IMG/VR virus record: IMGVR_UViG_3300023174_000040
Location: 62,001-126,000 of that record
Strand: one strand, 5' to 3'
DNA: 64,000 nucleotides
The notes under the pieces were generated by a model. It had not been told where the DNA came from and ran no database searches. It saw only the letters and a program-made list of their open reading frames with translations. This document shows positions 44,761-57,046 of this stretch, piece by piece (positions within the stretch are counted from its first letter, which is position 1; each line of letters begins with the position of its first letter). Both the position numbers and the translations under genes were made by a program.

Positions 44761-45645
44761 GTGAAAATGACTAGTTACTCAGAAAAATATCACCAGTTCA
44801 TCTCAAACGTTACTTATGAGGATGTTGATTGTTTCATTAAAAATGGAACTATGATTAATGGGGAAAAGCCCAACAATATTCAAAAGATAGCTTTGTTTTC
44901 AATTATTAAGACAGAACCATATTATGCTTACTGCTATGCTAGGGATGTAATTAAAGACCGGTGGATTGAAGTTGAAGAAATCATAAAGAATAGCCGTCCA
45001 GAATATATCCATCATTATGCCAAAGATGTTATCAAGGGACGGTGGATTGAGTGCGAAGAGATTATCAAGAGTGATCCCCAGTATGCTTATCTTTATTCCA
45101 GAGATGTAATTAAAAATCGTTGGAATGAAGCAGAAGAGATTATTAAGACTGACCCATATTATGCCTATCTCTATGCTAGAGATATAATTAAAGATCGCTG
45201 GATTGAAGCAGAAAAAATTATTAAAACTAGTCCTGCATATGTTTACTATTACACCAAAGATGTCCTAAAAGATAGATGGATTGAAGCTGAGAGAGTTCTA
45301 ATCCACTATATGTATCTTTACGCCAAAGATATAATTAAAGGCAGATGGATCGAATCAGAAGGGATTATTAAAACTGATCCACGATATGCCTATTATTATG
45401 CTAGAGACGTAATCGAAGGTCGCTGGGTTGACGCAGAAGAAACCATAAAAACTAGTCCAGAGTATGCCTGTGGTTACGCTAAAGATGTAATTAAAGGAAG
45501 ATGGATTGAAGCAGAAGAAGTCATCAAGACTAGTCCAGAATTTCTTTATCAATATGCAGTCGAAGTAATCAAAGGAAGATTATCAGAAGAACTTGAAAGT
45601 GTTTTTGAAACACTCGAGTTTCCTTCCGGTACGGTTGGAGAGTAG
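44761..45645 (+). CDS. tandem-repeat (about 25-aa) helical solenoid protein
   Basis: About 9 copies of P.YAY.YARDVIKGRW.EAE.IIK. Confidence 0.85.
   Translation: MKMTSYSEKYHQFISNVTYEDVDCFIKNGTMINGEKPNNIQKIALFSIIKTEPYYAYCYARDVIKDRWIEVEEIIKNSRPEYIHHYAKDVIKGRWIECEEIIKSDPQYAYLYSRDVIKNRWNEAEEIIKTDPYYAYLYARDIIKDRWIEAEKIIKTSPAYVYYYTKDVLKDRWIEAERVLIHYMYLYAKDIIKGRWIESEGIIKTDPRYAYYYARDVIEGRWVDAEETIKTSPEYACGYAKDVIKGRWIEAEEVIKTSPEFLYQYAVEVIKGRLSEELESVFETLEFPSGTVGE
45618..45636 (+). promoter_or_regulatory. conserved 19-nt motif copy
   Basis: gtttccttccggtacggtt upstream of 45679. Confidence 0.65.
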
Positions 45646-45939: not shown

Positions 45940-45951
45940 TAAAACAAACAA

Positions 45952-45970
45952 GTTTCCTTCCGGTACGGTT
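45952..45970 (+). promoter_or_regulatory. conserved 19-nt motif copy upstream of the Tas-like operon
   Basis: gtttccttccggtacggtt upstream of ATG 46005. Confidence 0.65.
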
Positions 45971-46004
45971 GAGAGTAGTCTCCATAAAACAAAAGAAACA
46001 AAAC

Positions 46005-46401: not shown

Positions 46402-47328
46402 ATGTCAAAGGAAAGTGCAACAAAGAAGAAGTGTCCCACTTGCGGCAAGGGCATTTCAAGCAAGAAGATTGCAGATAGCCTAATGCCAGATAGCCTGACA
46501 AGTCTTGGGACTGTTGCTAGGCTCAATAAAGATCTCACTAATAAGATCAAGACCCTCACCAAGGATGAAGTGAGGTATATTGTCGATTACTATTATATGA
46601 TTCAAGAGAATCGTAAGCGAAGCACTAATCAGATCACCGCTTTTGGCAAGGATAAAGAGCCTCATGAACTCTTTAGTTTCTTGAACGATCAAACAGAAGT
46701 TCTTGAAACTCAAATCAAACGGGCTATGGATCACTGGACTGATAGTTTTTTGATTGCAAAGATTTTGAAGGATAAGGTTTACGGAATCGGTCCTGTGATT
46801 ACTGCTGGTCTTGTTGCTCATATTGACATCAATAAGGCAAAGACCGCTGGTGCTATTTGGCGTTATGCTGGTCTTGATCCCACAAGTAAGTGGGAAAAGG
46901 GTCAAAAGCGTCCCTGGAACGCCAGCCTTAAAACCCTGTGCTGGAAGGTTGGACAGAGTTTCATGAAGTTCTCTGGTAAGGAAGAGTGCTTCTATGGTAA
47001 GCTTTACAAGTCCCAGAAGGAGTTTCTTGTAAAAAAGAACCTTGAAGGCGGATTCAAGGAACTTGCTGATTCTGTCTTGAATTCAAAGAACTTCAAGAAC
47101 AAGGAAGTTATCGCTAAGTATAAGAGTGGAATTCTGCCAGATGGTCATGTGGATGCTATGGCAAGGCGTTGGGTGGTTAAGTTGTTCCTGAGTAATGTCC
47201 ATGAACTTTGGTGCAAGGTTGAGGGAATTGATTGCCCCAAGCCTTATGTCATGGCTCATTTGGGACACACCCATCATATCATTCAGCCAAATCTTTTGGA
47301 TATTGATGAGTATTTGAAGAAGGATTAA
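46402..47328 (+). CDS. Nop-domain / IS110-related RNA-binding protein, TasA-like (no RuvC or HNH domain)
   Basis: Coiled coil, then VYGIGPVITAGLVAHIDI...GAIWRYAGLDP...WNASLKTLCW...HVDAMARRWVVKLFL (Transposase_20/Nop-like); no N-terminal DEDD RuvC domain and no IS110 SG serine motif; linked to 36-nt dual-repeat arrays. Confidence 0.8.
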   Translation: MSKESATKKKCPTCGKGISSKKIADSLMPDSLTSLGTVARLNKDLTNKIKTLTKDEVRYIVDYYYMIQENRKRSTNQITAFGKDKEPHELFSFLNDQTEVLETQIKRAMDHWTDSFLIAKILKDKVYGIGPVITAGLVAHIDINKAKTAGAIWRYAGLDPTSKWEKGQKRPWNASLKTLCWKVGQSFMKFSGKEECFYGKLYKSQKEFLVKKNLEGGFKELADSVLNSKNFKNKEVIAKYKSGILPDGHVDAMARRWVVKLFLSNVHELWCKVEGIDCPKPYVMAHLGHTHHIIQPNLLDIDEYLKKD

Positions 47329-47331
47329 AAC

Positions 47332-47490
47332 ATGAATTACTATATTGAAAAGCATGATATGGAAATTATTCTTGATGCTTTAGAATGTCTGAGTGAACAT
47401 ATCAAGACTAATAACAATAGTCCATATCCTTGGACTGTTGAAGATGTTGATGCACTTTTTCAAAGTTTTGATAATAGCAGGTCAGAGTAA
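47332..47490 (+). CDS. small hypothetical protein
   Basis: 52-aa ORF read by hand (MNYYIEKHD...). Confidence 0.5.
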   Translation: MNYYIEKHDMEIILDALECLSEHIKTNNNSPYPWTVEDVDALFQSFDNSRSE

Positions 47491-47536
47491 CAGATTATTG
47501 AAAAACTGTTTAAGTCAATGTCTGGGTAAGTAAACA

Positions 47537-47848
47537 ATGAATAAAAAGTTAAATTTTTTTAAAGATTTCACTTTAGGCGATGTCCTAAACAGTATAAATG
47601 AAAAATTTTTAGTTGATATGTCTAAAGATGAAGAAGAATACTTTCTCTGCCAAATAGAAATAGATAAAGTCGAACAGAATGATGTTGGAATTTTTGATGG
47701 AAAAAATTGTATGCGTTGTCTTTCCTCAAAAGATGTTCTTAAATTAATTGATCATATTTTAACAAAAGTCAAGAGTGAACCAGGTTTCTTGATTTTAACA
47801 TGCGTCATGAGTGAACCAGAAGCCCAGATAGGTTTATTGATAACATGA
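47537..47848 (+). CDS. hypothetical protein whose 3' end is TIGR-like repeat DNA
   Basis: ORF track; the last ~30 codons overlap the satellite array. Confidence 0.55.
   Translation: MNKKLNFFKDFTLGDVLNSINEKFLVDMSKDEEEYFLCQIEIDKVEQNDVGIFDGKNCMRCLSSKDVLKLIDHILTKVKSEPGFLILTCVMSEPEAQIGLLIT
47756..47829 (+). repeat. two-unit satellite TIGR-like array
   Basis: ATTTTAACA-aaagtcaag-AGTGAACC-aggtttcttg-ATTTTAACA-tgcgtcatg-AGTGAACC-agaagcccag-AT. Confidence 0.85.
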
Positions 47849-47926
47849 AAAAATAGTAGAGATCCGGCCGATTCCTTTTACCATTCGGCCCGAGAATAAA
47901 GAAACAAAAAGAAAACCTTAAAAATT

Positions 47927-48382
47927 ATGAATACTATTAAAATAGCCGCTGAAAAAGACTTGAATGTTGTAAATAAAATTTTTGAATGTTGGGACTTTCT
48001 TAAACTTTATGGATTTGTTCACGAGTTTGATGAAGATGAAGAGCAAATTTTAAAGTTTCTAACCGAGACTAAAAAGACTATTGAGAATTTATCAAACAAC
48101 CCAATTCAGACATTGATGGAATCCGATCCACATAATGAAGTTGTAGAAATTAATTTAAGCGGAAACAACGACCCGCTCAAAAGTTTTGTTCAAAATTTAG
48201 AAGATACTAATAAGAACAAAGTATTTTTCTTTTATGCGGATGTTTACGACCAAGTTCCAAATTTTGATTGGCCTAAAATTTGGGAAAAAATTGCCAAAAA
48301 TACAATCGAAGCACTACTGATGGAAAAGTATGAAGTAAAGTGGATGACCGGCGGATACGTTGGCAAATTTCCGGTTGAATAA
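47927..48382 (+). CDS. hypothetical protein
   Basis: ORF track. Confidence 0.7.
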   Translation: MNTIKIAAEKDLNVVNKIFECWDFLKLYGFVHEFDEDEEQILKFLTETKKTIENLSNNPIQTLMESDPHNEVVEINLSGNNDPLKSFVQNLEDTNKNKVFFFYADVYDQVPNFDWPKIWEKIAKNTIEALLMEKYEVKWMTGGYVGKFPVE

Positions 48383-48488
48383 AACCACATCGTCTGACTT
48401 GTGGTCAAAGATTGGAATTGTTTGGAACAATGTTATAAGTTAGACACCAGGTGATCTTTGAAAATCTTTAAATAAAGGAAAAGAAAAA

Positions 48489-48794
48489 ATGAACAATAAG
48501 ACTGGTTCAATGGTTTATGCTAAGATTACAGGTCGAGGTGAGTTTCCTATTGATATGTTAAGGTATGATTTGTGTAGTCCTGCAACAGAAGAAGATAGCA
48601 ATTTGATTCGCAGGACATTTTATGGTCTTAATTATAACTGGATTGTGATTGTTAAGCGACCTTTGCTTGAACGACGGCTTAAGAACAATCCTGTTTTTAC
48701 TTATGGTCGTTGGCAGAGTTTTGGTTGTAATATTGTTGAAGTTAATTCTTGTTACGAAAGTCGGATGGTAAAACCGGAAGTAATTGCCGGGTAA
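48489..48794 (+). CDS. hypothetical phage protein
   Basis: GRGEFPIDMLRYD...GRWQSFG. Confidence 0.75.
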   Translation: MNNKTGSMVYAKITGRGEFPIDMLRYDLCSPATEEDSNLIRRTFYGLNYNWIVIVKRPLLERRLKNNPVFTYGRWQSFGCNIVEVNSCYESRMVKPEVIAG

Positions 48795-48813
48795 TTTAAA
48801 ACTGGAGAAAAAA

Positions 48814-49140
48814 ATGCTAACCGAAATTAGTGTTGTTGCAAGCGATGATGAAACTTTTGAAAAGTATGGTGACGAAATAGACTTTAACATTGAAGTTGAA
48901 TGGGACGAATCAACAATAAGTTGGGAAAGTGATATTTGGAATACTTACGTTGGACCAACTGGAATTTTAGAAGAGTTTGTTGATGCTAAACTTAAGCAAG
49001 CCAAGTTAGATGGCGAACTTATGCCCCTGACTGAAGATCTTGAAAAGTTTGCAATCAAGAAACTGAGGGAGGGATGGCTTAAGGCCACAAATACATCAAA
49101 TGGCTATAGTGGTGAAATCTTAGATATGTATGAAGAATAA
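48814..49140 (+). CDS. acidic hypothetical protein
   Basis: ggaga RBS. Confidence 0.7.
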   Translation: MLTEISVVASDDETFEKYGDEIDFNIEVEWDESTISWESDIWNTYVGPTGILEEFVDAKLKQAKLDGELMPLTEDLEKFAIKKLREGWLKATNTSNGYSGEILDMYEE

Positions 49141-49767
49141 ATGATAAAACAAGCAATGAACGAGTTGTCTATTGAAGAAATTCAAAAAAATTTGAATTTT
49201 ACTGTCCCCAATATCACAGATTTTGTAGAAAAATACAAAAATCATTTTGAAGAATTTCTAAAAGATCCGACAGAACTTGTCACAAAAATAATTCGTGCAA
49301 TAGTGTCTAAAAAAAATTATGAGCATTTAGCAGAAGAATTAGATTTGCCGCCTTCATATGTTTATAGTATTGGCGTAATGATGAAAAATAATTCAGAATT
49401 TATAAAAAATTCTAATTCATTTGAGTCTATGCTTTGTTCTTTTTCAAAAAATATAAATTACGAATCTTTTTTACATTCAACAAAAGCAAAAAAAGAAAGC
49501 GAATTTATAATCAATATTTACAATTTTGAATTTCCAGATTGGTTTGACGAATCTGAACCATTGGTGATAACTTATCCTTGTGATATTTCTAATTACTTTG
49601 AATTACAAGATAATTTACATTTGAGGATTTTTGAAAACAATCATTGGGAATGTCCTTTGAGAAATCAAACTGGAGATAAACATCATTACATTACTGCTGA
49701 AACCAATCTTCAAAAAGAAGAAATGTTGCAATTTTTATTGTTGGGCTGTAAATATTTATTTTATTGA
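49141..49767 (+). CDS. hypothetical protein
   Basis: ORF track. Confidence 0.7.
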   Translation: MIKQAMNELSIEEIQKNLNFTVPNITDFVEKYKNHFEEFLKDPTELVTKIIRAIVSKKNYEHLAEELDLPPSYVYSIGVMMKNNSEFIKNSNSFESMLCSFSKNINYESFLHSTKAKKESEFIINIYNFEFPDWFDESEPLVITYPCDISNYFELQDNLHLRIFENNHWECPLRNQTGDKHHYITAETNLQKEEMLQFLLLGCKYLFY

Positions 49768-49779
49768 GAAGAAAAATTT

Positions 49780-50184
49780 ATGAATATCGGAAAACTTATT
49801 AAAGAAAATCGCAAAAAATTAAATATGACCCAAAAAGAGTTGGCACAAACTCTTGGAATTAGTCATATCACAGTTTGCAGATGGGAAACTAATTTTATAG
49901 TTCCAACAAATTATAACTGGATAGTTCTACAAAATTTATTCGGACTACGAAAAGACAATTTAATAATGCCAACTAAAGGCTTTACACCAGTAAAAGTTAG
50001 AATTATTAAGCCTTTGAAAAAATTCAAGAAAATAAATAAAACCGCTGAAAGAAACAAACAAATTATCGAAAATTATAAAAAAGGAATACCAATAGACAAT
50101 TTAGCAAAATTCTACTCCATAAAGGAAAGTACAATAAAAAGTATTCTACTTAGTCAAAAAATAAAATTAAATGTAAGAGAATAA
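49780..50184 (+). CDS. XRE/Cro-family HTH transcriptional regulator
   Basis: IKENRKKLNMTQKELAQTLGISHITVCRWE; second HTH-like tail IDNLAKFYSIKESTI. Confidence 0.85.
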   Translation: MNIGKLIKENRKKLNMTQKELAQTLGISHITVCRWETNFIVPTNYNWIVLQNLFGLRKDNLIMPTKGFTPVKVRIIKPLKKFKKINKTAERNKQIIENYKKGIPIDNLAKFYSIKESTIKSILLSQKIKLNVRE

Positions 50185-50211
50185 GATTTTGATTCCCAGC
50201 CAGTGGCTGGG

Positions 50212-50840
50212 ATTTTAACAAGAGTCAAGAGTGAACCAGAAGCCCAGATTTTTTCATTTTGCCGGAGTGAACCAACCTGATTGATTTTAACAAGGACGAG
50301 AAGTGAACCATTATTAACGATTTTAACATGAACGTTGAGTGAGTCATCAGACTGGATTTTTACATACTGCCGGAGCGAACCAAGCCCGACGATTTTAACA
50401 AGGTGATCAAGTGAACCAGCGATGGTGATTTTTAACAAAAGAACCATCATTCGATATTTAACAAGGTAGTTGAGTGAACCAATGTGAGAGATTTTGCATG
50501 TATAGTGAGTGAACCTTCGACCCGGATTTTAACACTGATCAAGAGTGAACCTAGCCCTTCGATTTTAACAAGGTAGTTGAGTGAACCACAGTCGGGAATT
50601 TTAACAAATTTGGTGAGTGAACCATCATTCGATATTTTAACAAGGTAGTTGAGTGAACCACAGACCCGGATTTTAAACAGTGATCAACAGTGAACCAATT
50701 TGCTTGATTTTAACAAGGTGAAAGAGTGAACCTAGTGCCGGTATTTTAACAATGTGCGAGAGTGAACCAAATAAGAAGATTTTAACATGATGGTTTAGTG
50801 AACCTAGCTGTGCGATTTTAACAATGTGCGAGAGTGAACC
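50212..50840 (+). repeat. TIGR-like tandem interspaced guide RNA array (18 units, 36-nt period)
   Basis: Alternating ATTTTAACA and AGTGAACC blocks separated by variable 9-nt and 10-nt segments; one unit partly deleted. Confidence 0.88.
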
Positions 50841-50891
50841 AAAAAATTCTACTTGAAAAAAGTTTAAAAGTGTGTTAAAGTGAAAAACCAA

Positions 50892-50910
50892 GTTTCCCTC
50901 CGGTACGGTT
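50892..50910 (+). promoter_or_regulatory. conserved 19-nt motif copy
   Basis: gtttccctccggtacggtt just downstream of the array. Confidence 0.65.
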
Positions 50911-51024
50911 GGAGGGAACTTTGTGAGCGTGACTTGGGGCTGCCTCTCCTAAATCTATAGTCCGTAAAAAGTGTAAAAATAATCAGTGCAGAATAACCCA
51001 CAAACACTCAAAGGAGAAATTAAA

Positions 51025-51381: not shown

Positions 51382-51466
51382 GCTGAAGTGGCGAAACTGG
51401 CGAAACGCAGGGGACTTAAAATCCCCCACATTAGAAACACTGCGGGTTCGAATCCCGCCTTCAGCA
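51382..51466 (+). tRNA. tRNA-Leu(UAA)
   Basis: GCTGAAG/CTTCAGC acceptor, GGGGA-CTTAAAA-TCCCC anticodon arm, long variable arm, TTCGAAT loop. Confidence 0.95.
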
Positions 51467-51482
51467 CTGTAAATAAAAACAA

Positions 51483-51842
51483 GGGGGCGTAAAGGTATCG
51501 ACTGGATAAAAAGATTTATAACTGCATGTCGAGGTTAGTCGAACGGCCTCGTTAAAATTCGACTAAAGCCTTAACTGGCACTGTTAATTACGCAATGGCT
51601 GCCTGATAAAAAGGGCAACCACGAATCTAGGAAGCTAATGTTGGATGCGTCCTAAAATTCGTCGTCAAATCCAACTGGTTTTCTGGTGGTCAACTTACCT
51701 GAAAACGAGAAAATAGGTTGAGAGATTTTAAAGACTTTTGTTTATTGTAATCTTTAAAATCTATTTGAACAATAAACCAAACATGTGAAGAAGTTATATT
51801 TTGATTTATTTCAGGACAGGAGTTCGACTCTCCTCGCCTCCA
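51483..51842 (+). ncRNA. ssrA: tmRNA; tag (A)GTVNYAMAA*
   Basis: 5' GGGGGCG pairs with 3' CGCCTCC-A, G-U at position 3, T-arm caggag-ttcgact-ctcct; tag ORF ggc act gtt aat tac gca atg gct gcc tga. Confidence 0.92.
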
Positions 51843-56778: not shown

Positions 56779-57042
56779 CCGAAGGTAGCAAAACGGTTAA
56801 TGCAACAAACTCATGAATTTTCGTGCCATACGATTGGAAACTTCGTATGGGATGTCGTCAAATTCGGTGAAACCTAAATGCGTGAGCATATGGCAATGCC
56901 GAGCGAAGCCCGTAAGGGAACGTGTAGAGACTTAACGGCGACCACCTAAATCGTAAGATATGGTGAAGACAAAGTCCAAGGAGTGGTGAAAATCACACAA
57001 ACTTGAATTTGTAGACTGTGGGTTCGAATCCCACCCTTCGGA
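56779..57042 (+). tRNA. tRNA(CAU), probably Ile2, interrupted by a group I intron
   Basis: Exons 56779-56814 and 57006-57042 give CCGAAGG/CCTTCGG-A and ACAAA-CTCATAA-TTTGT; lies 16 nt after tilS. Confidence 0.88.
56815..57005 (+). ncRNA. group I self-splicing intron (191 nt, no ORF)
   Basis: aaattcggtgaa, caatgccgagc, gtagagact, aaagtcc; terminal G; P1 CATGAA/TTCGTG with a U-G wobble at the 5' splice site. Confidence 0.9.
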
Positions 57043-57046
57043 CGTA

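What the first reader, a model, noticed from the sequence alone, without database searches (positions are those of the whole stretch)
47756..47829. Satellite two-unit guide array hidden inside the 3' end of a CDS
Seen: two perfect repeat units lie about 430 nt after the Tas-like gene, inside ORF 47537..47848. The segment gagtgaaccagaagcccagat is identical to unit 1 of the main array, and aaagtcaag differs by one base from agagtcaag. Inference: the array may once have been adjacent to the tas gene and then been split by insertion of the 47.8-50.2 kb gene block. Alternatively this is a separately expressed mini-array.
Basis: partly seen in the sequence, partly recalled or inferred. Interest (0 to 1): 0.72.

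Follow-up and report, generated by a model that had tools for sequence, protein, structure and literature searches.

The report
Displaced two-unit TIGR guide array
Two guide-RNA units of a jumbo phage's TIGR-Tas system sit 2.4 kb away from the main array because recombination between related phages pasted them over the end of a neighbouring gene; this shows how such arrays get rearranged, but it is not a new kind of system.

Summary
Two perfect 36-nt TIGR units lie at 47756-47829, 428 nt after a bona fide tas gene. Their last 21 nt are identical to unit 1 of the main array (50211-50849).

The "CDS" around them is not a normal gene end. ORF 47537-47848 is a conserved 104-aa phage gene cut after codon 73. 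Four full-length homologues share a different, conserved C-terminus, and every relative stops aligning exactly at 47756.

In the closest relative (L009, Tas 99%), the same two units (X, Y) are the first two units of one contiguous array. The window's main array instead starts with an X/Y hybrid unit, as in two other relatives (L029, run X11).

The satellite lies where the match to L009 ends, ahead of an array head of the X11/L029 type. It is best read as an L009-type array head left at a recombination joint with 1-2 nt of microhomology on each side.

Independent assemblies and runs from 2018 to 2025 carry the identical structure, so it is not an assembly artefact.

Unit X has both edge repeats, and Tas keeps the Y/H processing dyad. 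Expression as a mini-array is therefore plausible, but it is untested because no RNA run was listed.

It is a new member of a known kind and of moderate interest.

The parts
46402..47328 (+). tas gene, 308 aa. TasA-type: coiled coil plus Nop domain with no recognisable nuclease domain. It carries the Y282/H289 pre-tigRNA processing dyad.
   Evidence: NCBIfam NF052498 TIGR_Tas_endo scores 184.8 bits against a cut-off of 100. PDB matches are TasH at E=1.1e-16 and TasR 9mty at 7.9e-12. Y282 and H289 align with SpTasH Y289 and H296. There is no His in residues 1-87, and most homologues are 260-290 aa.
47332..47490 (+). Small ORF (52 aa) between tas and the truncated gene. L009 and L029 have a 55-56 aa counterpart.
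47510..47528 (+). Intergenic motif TTAAGTCAATGTCTGGGTA, 8 nt before the ATG of the truncated gene. It may be a phage promoter and is the only copy in this TIGR locus.
   Evidence: There are 5 copies on the + strand of the 323-kb record, none spanned by a long ORF. One search shows the L009 copies that precede ORF142 and the array; its counterpart of this copy reads GTCCGGGTA. The promoter function is inferred.
47537..47755 (+). Intact first 73 codons of an ORF104-family gene (called A1 in this report).
   Evidence: 219 of 219 nt are identical to L009 9145-9363. Identity is 97.3% to L017 and L018 and 83% to L014, and all alignments end at 47756.
47756..47829 (+). Satellite array: units X and Y plus a 3-nt partial edge repeat. 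It replaces about 79 nt of the native gene with about 72 nt.
   Evidence: It is 96% identical to L009 10885-10959, the first two units of L009's contiguous array.
47828..47844 (+). Remnant of the native 3' end of the ORF104-family gene: ATAGGTTTATTGATAA against ATAGTTTTATTTGATAA in relatives.
   Evidence: The local alignment scores 12. That score is reached by 0.085% of random segments of this genome.
47537..47848 (+). Chimeric ORF of 103 aa. The last 30 codons are read-through of the array units and the out-of-frame tail.
47927..50184 (+). Variable cassette block B. It holds five ORFs of 151, 101, 118 (or 108), 208 and 134 aa; the last is an HTH regulator.
   Evidence: The block is absent from L009, L010 and L029. 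ORF151 occurs alone in L024 and L026, and ORF118 occurs alone in X11.
50185..50210 (+). Degenerate remnant of unit 0 (GATTTTGATTCCCAGCCAGTGGCTGG). It starts directly after the stop codon of the HTH gene.
   Evidence: compare L029 unit 0, spacer B GTGGCTGA. It is shared with X11, from 50183 onward.
50211..50246 (+). Main-array unit 1, an X/Y hybrid. Its spacer A is that of X with one change, and its spacer B is that of Y.
50211..50849 (+). Main TIGR array: 17 regular units plus one degenerate unit at 50427-50455.
50892..50925 (+). Stem-loop GTTTCCCTCC-N8-TGGAGGGAAC followed by TTTGTG after the array. It looks like a terminator, and the element is repeated at 45608 and 45942.
   Evidence: (family D7). 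The consensus terminator scan did not pick it up.

Best explanation
The satellite is the head (first two units, X and Y) of a TIGR array of the type seen in the sister phage L009. It was left at a recombination joint between two closely related jumbo-phage genomes.

Junction 1 (47755|47756) joins codon 73 of an ORF104-family gene to the edge repeat of unit X. Junction 2 (about 47827-47830) joins the partial edge repeat after unit Y to the last ~17 nt of an ORF104-family gene. That second gene comes from a genome carrying cassette block B and its own array, whose head is a unit-0 remnant plus an X/Y hybrid unit. Both junctions have only 1-2 nt of microhomology, which points to illegitimate recombination or template switching. 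Two events, or one double switch, would be enough.

The ORF's last 30 codons are not a conserved protein end. They stay open because the 36-nt period equals 12 codons and two of the three reading frames have no stop in the repeats.

Function is inferred, not shown. The units share the strand of tas, 235 nt downstream of the intergenic motif that precedes the truncated gene, so they are probably transcribed with that gene. Tas here is TasA-type and keeps the Y282/H289 processing dyad. It could cut out a 36-nt guide X, which has edge repeats on both sides. It could probably also cut out guide Y, whose 3' edge is truncated as in terminal units. Neither spacer pair is present in the main array. 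A TasA-type protein would be expected to bind DNA and repress rather than cleave.
For: - **Identity of the system.** NF052498 scores 184.8 bits against a cut-off of 100. PDB matches are TasH at 1.1e-16 and TasR at 7.9e-12. The 36-nt dual-repeat array is shown.
- **Truncation of the gene.** Four full-length homologues conserve the C-terminus NVFKVIKTDPSSDYNIGVVLTFYSLKPYSFI. The window shares only residues 1-73. Nucleotide alignments to L009, L014, L017 and L018 all stop at 47756.
- **Source of the units.** L009 10885-10959 holds X and Y, 96% identical to the satellite, as the first units of a contiguous array.
- **The main array has its own head.** Window unit 1 (AGAGTCAAG/GAAGCCCA) is identical to the unit in L029. 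It also occurs, with the original spacer A, in X11. Neither relative's contig shows a satellite.
- **Mosaic structure.** The left flank is about 99% identical to L009, with A1 at 219/219. In tas, X11 differs from the window at 21 of 948 nt, more than L009 does (98.9% identity). X11 nevertheless shares the window's unit-0 remnant and its spacer B of unit 2 (ACCTGATT), whereas L009 has ACCTGCTT there.
- **Tail remnant.** The tail resembles the native gene end (0.085% of random segments score as well) but has 2 differences in 17 nt, against 0 in 219 for A1.
- **Not an artefact.** Identical fused ORF, satellite, block B and main array occur in ENA ERZ27247972 and Logan SRR7812574, and the short ENA ERZ28576314 contig (1,509 nt) holds the fused ORF and satellite. 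Contigs of runs X2 (2019) and X3 (2025) bridge both junctions with 0 differences.
- **Processability.** One- to three-unit arrays are processed if they have full edge repeats (PMC12045711, read). The catalytic residues are Y289 and H296 in SpTasH (PMC13421893), which align to Y282 and H289 here. TasA acts as an RNA-guided repressor (bioRxiv 10.64898/2026.09.09.750476).
Against: - No genome with either parental arrangement was found. The missing forms are an intact ORF104 gene followed by block B, and A1 fused to X-Y-unit 2 without block B.
- The order and number of events are therefore inferred, and the tail homology rests on 17 nt.
- A 72-nt patch copied from an L009-like array into a block-B genome would give the same sequence.
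- Expression and processing are untested. No RNA run was listed.
- The consensus scans show neither a sigma-70 promoter nor a terminator specific to the satellite.
- No target for guides X, Y or X/Y was found in the phage's own 323 kb above the level of mismatched-pair controls.
- All carriers of the satellite are nearly identical, so its conservation says nothing about selection.
Confidence: 0.7

Rival explanations
1. One reading: one contiguous array once followed tas, and the 2.4-kb block 47830-50210 was inserted as a unit into it. This would leave two units behind and duplicate the 21-nt target.
For: - The array overlaps the tas stop codon in L010 and L036.
- X and Y are contiguous with unit 2 in L009.
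- An exact 21-nt direct repeat flanks the block.
Against: - The satellite is joined to a truncated ORF104-family gene, not to tas.
- L009 has the same two genes plus another block upstream of an unsplit array.
- The main array begins with its own unit-0 remnant and an X/Y hybrid, both shared with relatives that lack a satellite.
- A remnant of the ORF104 3' end follows unit Y.
- The Pfam and PHROG scans gave no recombinase match to the block's genes, and two of its genes occur singly elsewhere.
Confidence: 0.1
2. An intragenomic patch: replication slippage or template switching within one genome copied 72-74 nt of its own array head into the ORF104-family gene 2.4 kb upstream. The main array later lost 36 nt by a loop-to-loop deletion, which produced the X/Y hybrid.
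For: - The inserted length (about 72 nt) is close to the replaced length (about 79 nt), and both junctions have 1-2 nt of microhomology.
- Loop-to-loop 36-nt differences are common among these arrays.
Against: - The hybrid unit with the same A-to-G change (AGAGTCAAG) is also in L029. That would need a parallel deletion plus a parallel substitution, or a later exchange.
- The tail differs more from relatives than A1 does.
- Native ORF104 sequence has no significant similarity to the units that could have guided a conversion (p = 0.3-0.55).
Confidence: 0.15
3. An RNA-templated insertion: a 72-nt two-unit processing intermediate of the pre-tigRNA was copied into a break in the ORF104-family gene.
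For: - The insert is 71-74 nt, which equals two units, and both ends lie at the same phase inside an edge repeat.
- Processing intermediates of 72 and 108 nt are reported (PMC12045711).
Against: - No reverse transcriptase (PF00078) was found in the 323-kb record, which is 64% complete.
- The boundaries fall after position 1-2 of the 10-nt edge repeat, whereas processing is described as occurring in the middle of the edge repeat.
- A phase match of this kind is expected in roughly 1 of 10 random copies, and the AT microhomology explains the boundaries as well.
Confidence: 0.03
4. An assembly artefact, or a genuine protein-coding C-terminus that resembles the repeat by chance.
For: The window comes from a metagenome assembly, and the ORF is open through the units.
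Against: - Contigs from four other data sets (two ENA assemblies and Logan contigs of runs X2, 2019, and X3, 2025) carry it. Logan's SRR7812574 contig also carries it but may come from the source sample. The contigs of X2 and X3 bridge both junctions without a difference.
- Both units match the repeat pattern with 0 mismatches, against 0.05 matches expected in the whole window.
- The homologues' C-terminus is different and conserved.
Confidence: 0.02

Closest known systems
Dual-repeat TIGR-Tas systems, TasA class (Faure et al. 2025, PMC12045711; Xu et al. 2026 preprint 10.64898/2026.09.09.750476)
   Same: - The Tas protein has a Nop domain and passes the curated NCBIfam model.
- The array has a 36-nt period with alternating edge (GATTTTAACA) and loop (AGTGAACCA) repeats and spacers of 9 and 8 nt.
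- The loop repeat carries UG...CCA as described for box D and box C.
- The Y/H processing dyad is present, and the system is phage-borne.
- Published loci can have arrays upstream, downstream or on both sides of tas, and occasionally inside the tas coding sequence.
   Different: - The extra array has only two units.
- It is not in tas or in an intergenic leader. It overwrites the 3' part of an unrelated neighbouring gene.
- It duplicates, in unfused form, the spacers of the main array's first unit.
- Comparison with relatives shows it to be a recent recombination product rather than a conserved second array.
Sister phage locus L009 (IMGVR_UViG_3300027963_000035, Tas 99% identical)
   Same: It has the same tas, small ORF and ORF104-family gene (first 219 nt identical), the same repeat type and many shared units. 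X and Y are present and 96% identical to the satellite.
   Different: - The ORF104-family gene is intact (104 aa).
- A different three-gene block lies between it and the array.
- X and Y are the first two units of one contiguous array.
- There is no satellite anywhere in the 251-kb record.
Relatives L010 (IMGVR_UViG_3300027741_000022) and L036 (Logan SRR30597360), Tas 92-93% aa identity
   Same: They share the repeat sequences and the orientation.
   Different: The array begins on the tas stop codon (GAT TGA ACC...), with no genes between tas and the array and no satellite.
CRISPR mini-arrays and solitary repeat-spacer units in phages
   Same: Both are short guide arrays carried away from the main locus, and minimal arrays can be processed by an effector supplied in trans.
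   Different: The chemistry and architecture differ: two short alternating repeats, split spacers and a Nop-domain effector. Nothing here indicates that the satellite was selected for a function.

Membership tests
TIGR-Tas system | A Tas protein with a Nop-type RNA-binding domain | tested here: met
   NF052498 scores 184.8 bits (cut-off 100) and covers profile positions 1-214 of 215. PDB TasH E=1.1e-16 and TasR 9mty 7.9e-12. phrog_4285 2.5e-36.
TIGR-Tas system | An array of two alternating 8-12-nt repeats separated by ~9-nt spacers, with a unit of about 36 nt | tested here: met
   The edge repeat is 10 nt, spacer A 9 nt, the loop repeat 9 nt and spacer B 8 nt. Spacing is 36 nt. There are 18 pattern matches against 0.05 expected.
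TIGR-Tas system | Box D (UG) and box C (CCA) motifs in both repeats, covarying between edge and loop | tested here: inconclusive
   The loop AGUGAACCA carries UG...CCA as published. The edge GAUUUUAACA ends in ACA and has U where the loop has G. This could be a compensated G-C to U-A pair, but the register was assigned by eye only.
TIGR-Tas system | Transcription and processing into 36-nt tigRNAs | not testable with these tools
   No RNA run holding this sequence was listed.
Dual-repeat Tas with autonomous processing | A Y/H dyad in the C-terminal loop of the Nop domain (SpTasH Y289 and H296) | tested here: met
   The HMMER alignment places Y282 and H289 of this protein on Y289 and H296 of SpTasH.
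TasA (nuclease-lacking class) | No HNH or RuvC domain N-terminal to the coiled coil and Nop domain | tested here: met
   Pfam gives no nuclease hit. There is no His in residues 1-87 and only one CxxC. Most homologues are 260-290 aa and cover 85% of the query. No structure was predicted.
Functional minimal TIGR array | Full edge repeats on both sides of a unit (required for processing of 1-3-unit arrays, PMC12045711) | tested here: met
   This is met for unit X: its 5' edge is tATTTTAACA, a variant also used at 50633 and 50742, and its 3' edge is GATTTTAACA. Unit Y has a full 5' edge, but only 5 of 10 positions of its 3' edge match, as at the natural end of the main array.
Conserved protein-coding C-terminus | Homologues keep this C-terminus | tested here: not met
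   Four homologues conserve a different 31-residue C-terminus, and identity ends at residue 73.
Mobile element inserted into an array | A coherent element with a recombinase and a target duplication that recurs elsewhere | tested here: not met
   The Pfam and PHROG scans gave no recombinase match. ORF151 and ORF118 occur singly in other phages. The left end of the block was not found in any other viral contig.
CRISPR array | A single 25-36-nt repeat separated by spacers of similar size | tested here: not met
   The array has two different 9-10-nt repeats and 8-9-nt spacers.

The most novel reading that the evidence does not exclude
The satellite may not be inert debris. It could be a newly seeded, independently transcribed two-guide array that keeps the ancestral guides X and Y, which the main array lost by fusion. 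Its exact two-unit, in-phase boundaries would then reflect the way TIGR units are copied to new places, for instance through a two-unit pre-tigRNA intermediate or a Tas-bound segment. That would give a first natural clue to how TIGR arrays arise and expand, which the field lists as unknown.
Probability: 0.07. Interest if true: 0.8.

Novelty: new member of a known kind. Interest (0 to 1): 0.4.

Why it matters
TIGR-Tas systems were described only in 2025. Both founding papers say it is unknown how the arrays emerge, expand and rearrange, and they suggest that the very short repeats protect the arrays from recombination.

This locus and five relatives give a dated natural series of states:
- an array abutting tas;
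- gene cassettes wedged between tas and the array;
- units lost or exchanged in 36-nt steps at the 9-nt loop repeats, which creates hybrid guides;
- one case in which two units were moved to a new place, where they destroyed the end of a neighbouring gene.

The series shows that these arrays do recombine, and that a spacer pair can be broken up and reassorted. It also offers a simple test case for whether a two-unit array outside the main locus is processed and used. For annotation, it warns that ORFs running into TIGR arrays are read-through, not protein.

Tried and rejected
- **RNA evidence.** Two run searches (kind any, kind rna) listed no RNA run, so expression could not be tested.
- **Self-targets.** All 19 spacer pairs were searched in both possible strand geometries, with gaps of 0-6 nt and up to 2 mismatches, against the 323-kb phage record. 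This gave 14 hits, all with 2 mismatches. Controls with mismatched spacer pairs gave 12-23 hits. No target was found.
- **Guided gene conversion.** Similarity between the native ORF104 3' part and the units looked suggestive by eye, but it is not significant (p = 0.30, 0.55 and 0.35 against random genome segments).
- **Reverse transcriptase.** None was found in the record, which weakens the RNA-templated idea.
- **Search for a pre-event ancestor.** None of these searches found one:
  - the exact left end of block B in viral contigs (0 hits);
  - the X-unit pattern in metagenome contigs (only the window's own contig, L009's contig and L029);
  - all contigs encoding the exact ORF151 or the exact Tas (only the same arrangement);
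  - homologues of ORF208 in viral contigs (none).
- **Satellites in relatives.** None occurs in the whole records of L009 and L010.
- **Consensus scans.** The promoter and terminator scans gave nothing above shuffled expectation near the satellite. The hairpin at 47863-47892 has no T tract.
- **Tandem Repeats Finder.** It does not report the two-unit satellite at score 30. Pattern search is needed to find it.
- **Steps not run.** I did not predict a structure or a complex, because sequence evidence already settled the class of the Tas protein.

Full report
**Setting**

The window is bases 62001-126000 of a 323-kb IMG/VR virus record from lake water. CheckV estimates it to be 64% complete. It encodes a tRNA-Leu and a tmRNA.

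**1. The observation**

Two 36-nt units lie at 47756-47829.
- Unit X consists of tATTTTAACA, AAAGTCAAG, AGTGAACCA and GGTTTCTT.
- Unit Y consists of GATTTTAACA, TGCGTCATG, AGTGAACCA and GAAGCCCA, followed by GAT.

Both match the repeat pattern of the main array (50211-50849) without a mismatch. With up to 2 mismatches the pattern has 18 matches in the window, against 0.05 expected. It has no other match in the 323-kb record.

The 21 nt at 47809-47829 are identical to 50229-50249. Spacer A of X differs by one base from spacer A of main-array unit 1. The tas ORF ends at 47328, and the units lie inside ORF 47537-47848.

**2. The system**

ORF 46402-47328 (308 aa) passes the curated NCBIfam model NF052498, "TIGR-Tas system RNA-guided endonuclease", at 184.8 bits against a cut-off of 100. 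It matches solved TasH (E=1.1e-16) and TasR 9mty (7.9e-12) over its Nop domain.

In that alignment, Y282 and H289 fall on SpTasH Y289 and H296. PMC13421893 names these as the catalytic residues for pre-tigRNA maturation.

The protein has no nuclease-domain hit in Pfam. It has no histidine in its first 87 residues. Most of its 2,288 homologues are 260-290 aa. I therefore class it as TasA-type with a short N-terminal extension.

The array fits the published dual-repeat architecture (PMC12045711): a 10-nt edge repeat, a 9-nt spacer A, a 9-nt loop repeat with UG...CCA and an 8-nt spacer B.

**3. The "CDS"**

The L009 homologue of ORF 47537-47848 is 104 aa long. Including it, four full-length homologues share the C-terminus NVFKVIKTDPSSDYNIGVVLTFYSLKPYSFI. 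The other three come from other metagenomes. One lies in a phage contig (L014) whose 16-kb locus shows no array and no tas-like gene.

The window protein is identical to L009's through residue 73 and then reads ILTKVKSEPGFLILTCVMSEPEAQIGLLIT, which is the translation of the units. At the DNA level, alignments to L009, L014, L017 and L018 all stop exactly at 47756.

The reading frame stays open because 36 nt equal 12 codons and two of the three frames have no stop in the repeats. The same read-through happens to an unrelated ORF at the array head of L029. The gene is therefore truncated and fused. The units are not hidden in a conserved protein end.

**4. Where the units come from**

Six genomes can be compared.

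| Genome | Tas similarity to window | Between tas and the array | Array head | Satellite |
|---|---|---|---|---|
| Window | - | orf52, truncated ORF104, block B (5 ORFs) | unit-0 remnant, then X/Y hybrid AGAGTCAAG/GAAGCCCA | yes |
| L009 | 99% aa | orf55, intact ORF104, a different 3-gene block, leader | X, then Y, then unit 2 | none in the 251-kb record |
| L029 | 98.5% nt | orf56, about 800 nt of other sequence, same leader as L009 | full unit 0, then X/Y hybrid identical to the window's | none on the 3-kb contig |
| X11 (Logan contig) | 97.8% nt | orf52, then ORF118 only | same unit-0 remnant, then hybrid with the original spacer A (50222 G>A) | none on the contig |
| L010 | 93% aa | nothing | array starts on the tas stop codon | none in the 188-kb record |
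| L036 | 92% aa | nothing | array starts on the tas stop codon | none on the 5.7-kb contig |

Sources: L009; L029; X11; L010, L036; whole records of L009 and L010.

In L009, X (AAAGTCAAG/GTTTCCTT) and Y (TGCGTCCATG/GAAGCCCA) are 96% identical to the satellite.

The 24 nt read from 47827 onward contain ATAGGTTTATTGATAA. This resembles the native gene end ATAGTTTTATTTGATAA. Only 0.085% of random genome segments score as well. About 72 nt of array therefore replace about 79 nt of gene, and the real end of an ORF104-family gene follows.

**5. History**

The window matches L009 at about 99% up to 47755, with the last 219 nt identical. On the right side, it shares its unit-0 remnant, the hybrid unit and spacer B of unit 2 (ACCTGATT) with X11 and L029 rather than with L009. 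The tail has 2 differences in 17 nt, against 0 in 219 for A1.

I read the locus as a mosaic of two related genomes with the satellite at the joint:
- an L009-like parent supplies everything up to and including its array head X-Y;
- a block-B parent supplies the ORF104 tail, block B and its own array.

Both junctions share only 1-2 nt (CATA|TTTT and GAT|AGG), which indicates illegitimate recombination or template switching.

I cannot tell a single double switch from two successive events. I also cannot exclude that a 72-nt patch was copied into a block-B genome. No parental form was found.

Block B is not a mobile unit. The Pfam and PHROG scans gave no recombinase match. ORF151 occurs alone in two other phage contexts, and ORF118 occurs alone in X11.

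**6. It is not an artefact**

The same fused ORF, satellite, block B and main array occur in ENA ERZ27247972 (60-kb contig) and Logan SRR7812574. The 1,509-nt ENA ERZ28576314 contig holds the fused ORF and the satellite.

Logan contigs of run X2 (2019) and run X3 (2025) cross both junctions with no difference. The lineage has therefore kept this structure for years.

**7. How it probably works (inferred)**

The units lie on the tas strand, 235 nt downstream of an intergenic motif, TTAAGTCAATGTCTGGGTA. That motif has five + strand copies in the record, none of them spanned by a long ORF. L009 has related copies ahead of ORF142 and ahead of its array. In the window the main array has none; it abuts the stop codon of the HTH gene.

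If the motif is a promoter, the satellite is the first TIGR sequence on that transcript.

Arrays of one to three units are processed if the edge repeats are complete. Unit X has both edges. Unit Y has a truncated 3' edge, as terminal units do. Tas keeps the processing dyad.

The guides X and Y are not in the main array, which has only their hybrid. A TasA-type effector would be expected to bind and repress rather than cut.

None of this could be tested. No RNA run was listed, and no target was found in the phage itself above control level.

**8. Comparison with what is known, and verdict**

Published TIGR loci can have arrays on either or both sides of tas, and sometimes inside tas. A second array as such is therefore not new.

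What is particular here is a two-unit copy that overwrites the end of an unrelated gene and can be traced to a recombination joint.

The papers state that array emergence and expansion are unexplained, and they suggest that short repeats limit recombination. This family of loci shows otherwise:
- 36-nt loop-to-loop gains or losses occur;
- blocks of units are exchanged;
- spacer A and spacer B of a unit are inherited separately.

I rate the locus as a new member of a known kind and of moderate interest.

Noticed in passing
window 50211-50849 compared with L009 10848-11530 and L029 2898-3059: Related arrays differ mostly by changes whose breakpoints lie in the 9-nt loop repeat. As a result, spacer A and spacer B of a unit are inherited separately. 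About 8 units are shared whole between the window and L009, about 3 share only spacer A, and about 4 share only spacer B. L009 and L029 differ from each other by two 36/37-nt loop-to-loop indels at the array head. This was counted by eye from the parsed units and not tested statistically.
   Followed up: partly
window 50427-50455 and 50454-50669: The main array contains a degenerate, shortened unit (GATTTTTAACAAAAGAACCATCATTCGAT). It also repeats spacers: spacer A AGGTAGTTG occurs three times with three different spacers B, ATGTGCGAG occurs twice, and spacer B TCATTCGA occurs twice. This suggests internal duplication.
   Followed up: no
L010 8890-8925; L036 3695-3730: In the 92-93% Tas relatives, the first loop-repeat-like sequence of the array overlaps the tas stop codon (GAT TGA ACC ...). 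The array therefore starts inside the end of tas.
   Followed up: partly
window 51382-51467 and 51483-51842: A phage-encoded tRNA-Leu(TAA) and a tmRNA (tag GTVNYAMAA) lie about 550 nt downstream of the TIGR array. The tmRNA is conserved in L010 (91%) and L036 (84%). If Tas cuts the satellite out of the truncated gene's mRNA, the result would be a non-stop message. That link is speculation.
   Followed up: no
window 47510-47528; G000:C1 47797, 167185, 182099, 238184; L009 9459-9485 and 10818-10840: The intergenic motif TTAA-N(1-7)-TCTGGGTA(C/A)G has five + strand copies in the 323-kb record, none spanned by a long ORF. In L009, related copies precede the cassette gene ORF142 and the array. It may be a phage promoter or an RNA start.
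   Followed up: partly
window 45608-45645, 45942-45978, 50882-50919: A stem-loop element (GTTTCC[C/T]TCCGGTACGGTTGGAGGGAAC) is repeated three times. Each copy lies after a gene or after the array, and it looks like a shared terminator. The copy after the array is 100% identical in L009.
   Followed up: no
window 44761-45645: A 294-aa ORF is built of 78-nt (26-codon) tandem repeats of 61-70% identity. It is also present in L009, L010 and L029.
   Followed up: no
window 47200-47500: A patch with 46 differences from L009 lies within a flank that is otherwise about 99% identical. It covers the 3' end of tas and the small ORF52/55. This is another sign of mosaic exchange.
   Followed up: no
G000:C1:137408-137710 (outside the window): A full-length distant paralogue of the ORF104-family gene (29% identity over 104 aa) lies elsewhere in the same phage record.
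   Followed up: no
window 47765-47796: Within unit X, spacer A pairs with the end of spacer B plus the next edge repeat (11 bp including 2 G-U pairs) in the predicted RNA fold. Its meaning is unknown.
   Followed up: no
window 56976-57043: ARAGORN reports a tRNA-like gene with an undetermined anticodon. Similar sequence is present in L009 and L010.
   Followed up: no
L036 3865-3990 compared with window 50597-50669: Some spacers recur between lineages whose tas genes are only 88% identical, with point substitutions (TCATCAGA/AGATAGTTG/CAGAAACG against TCATTCGA/AGGTAGTTG/CAGACCCG). The spacers seem to drift like ordinary sequence rather than being replaced.
   Followed up: no
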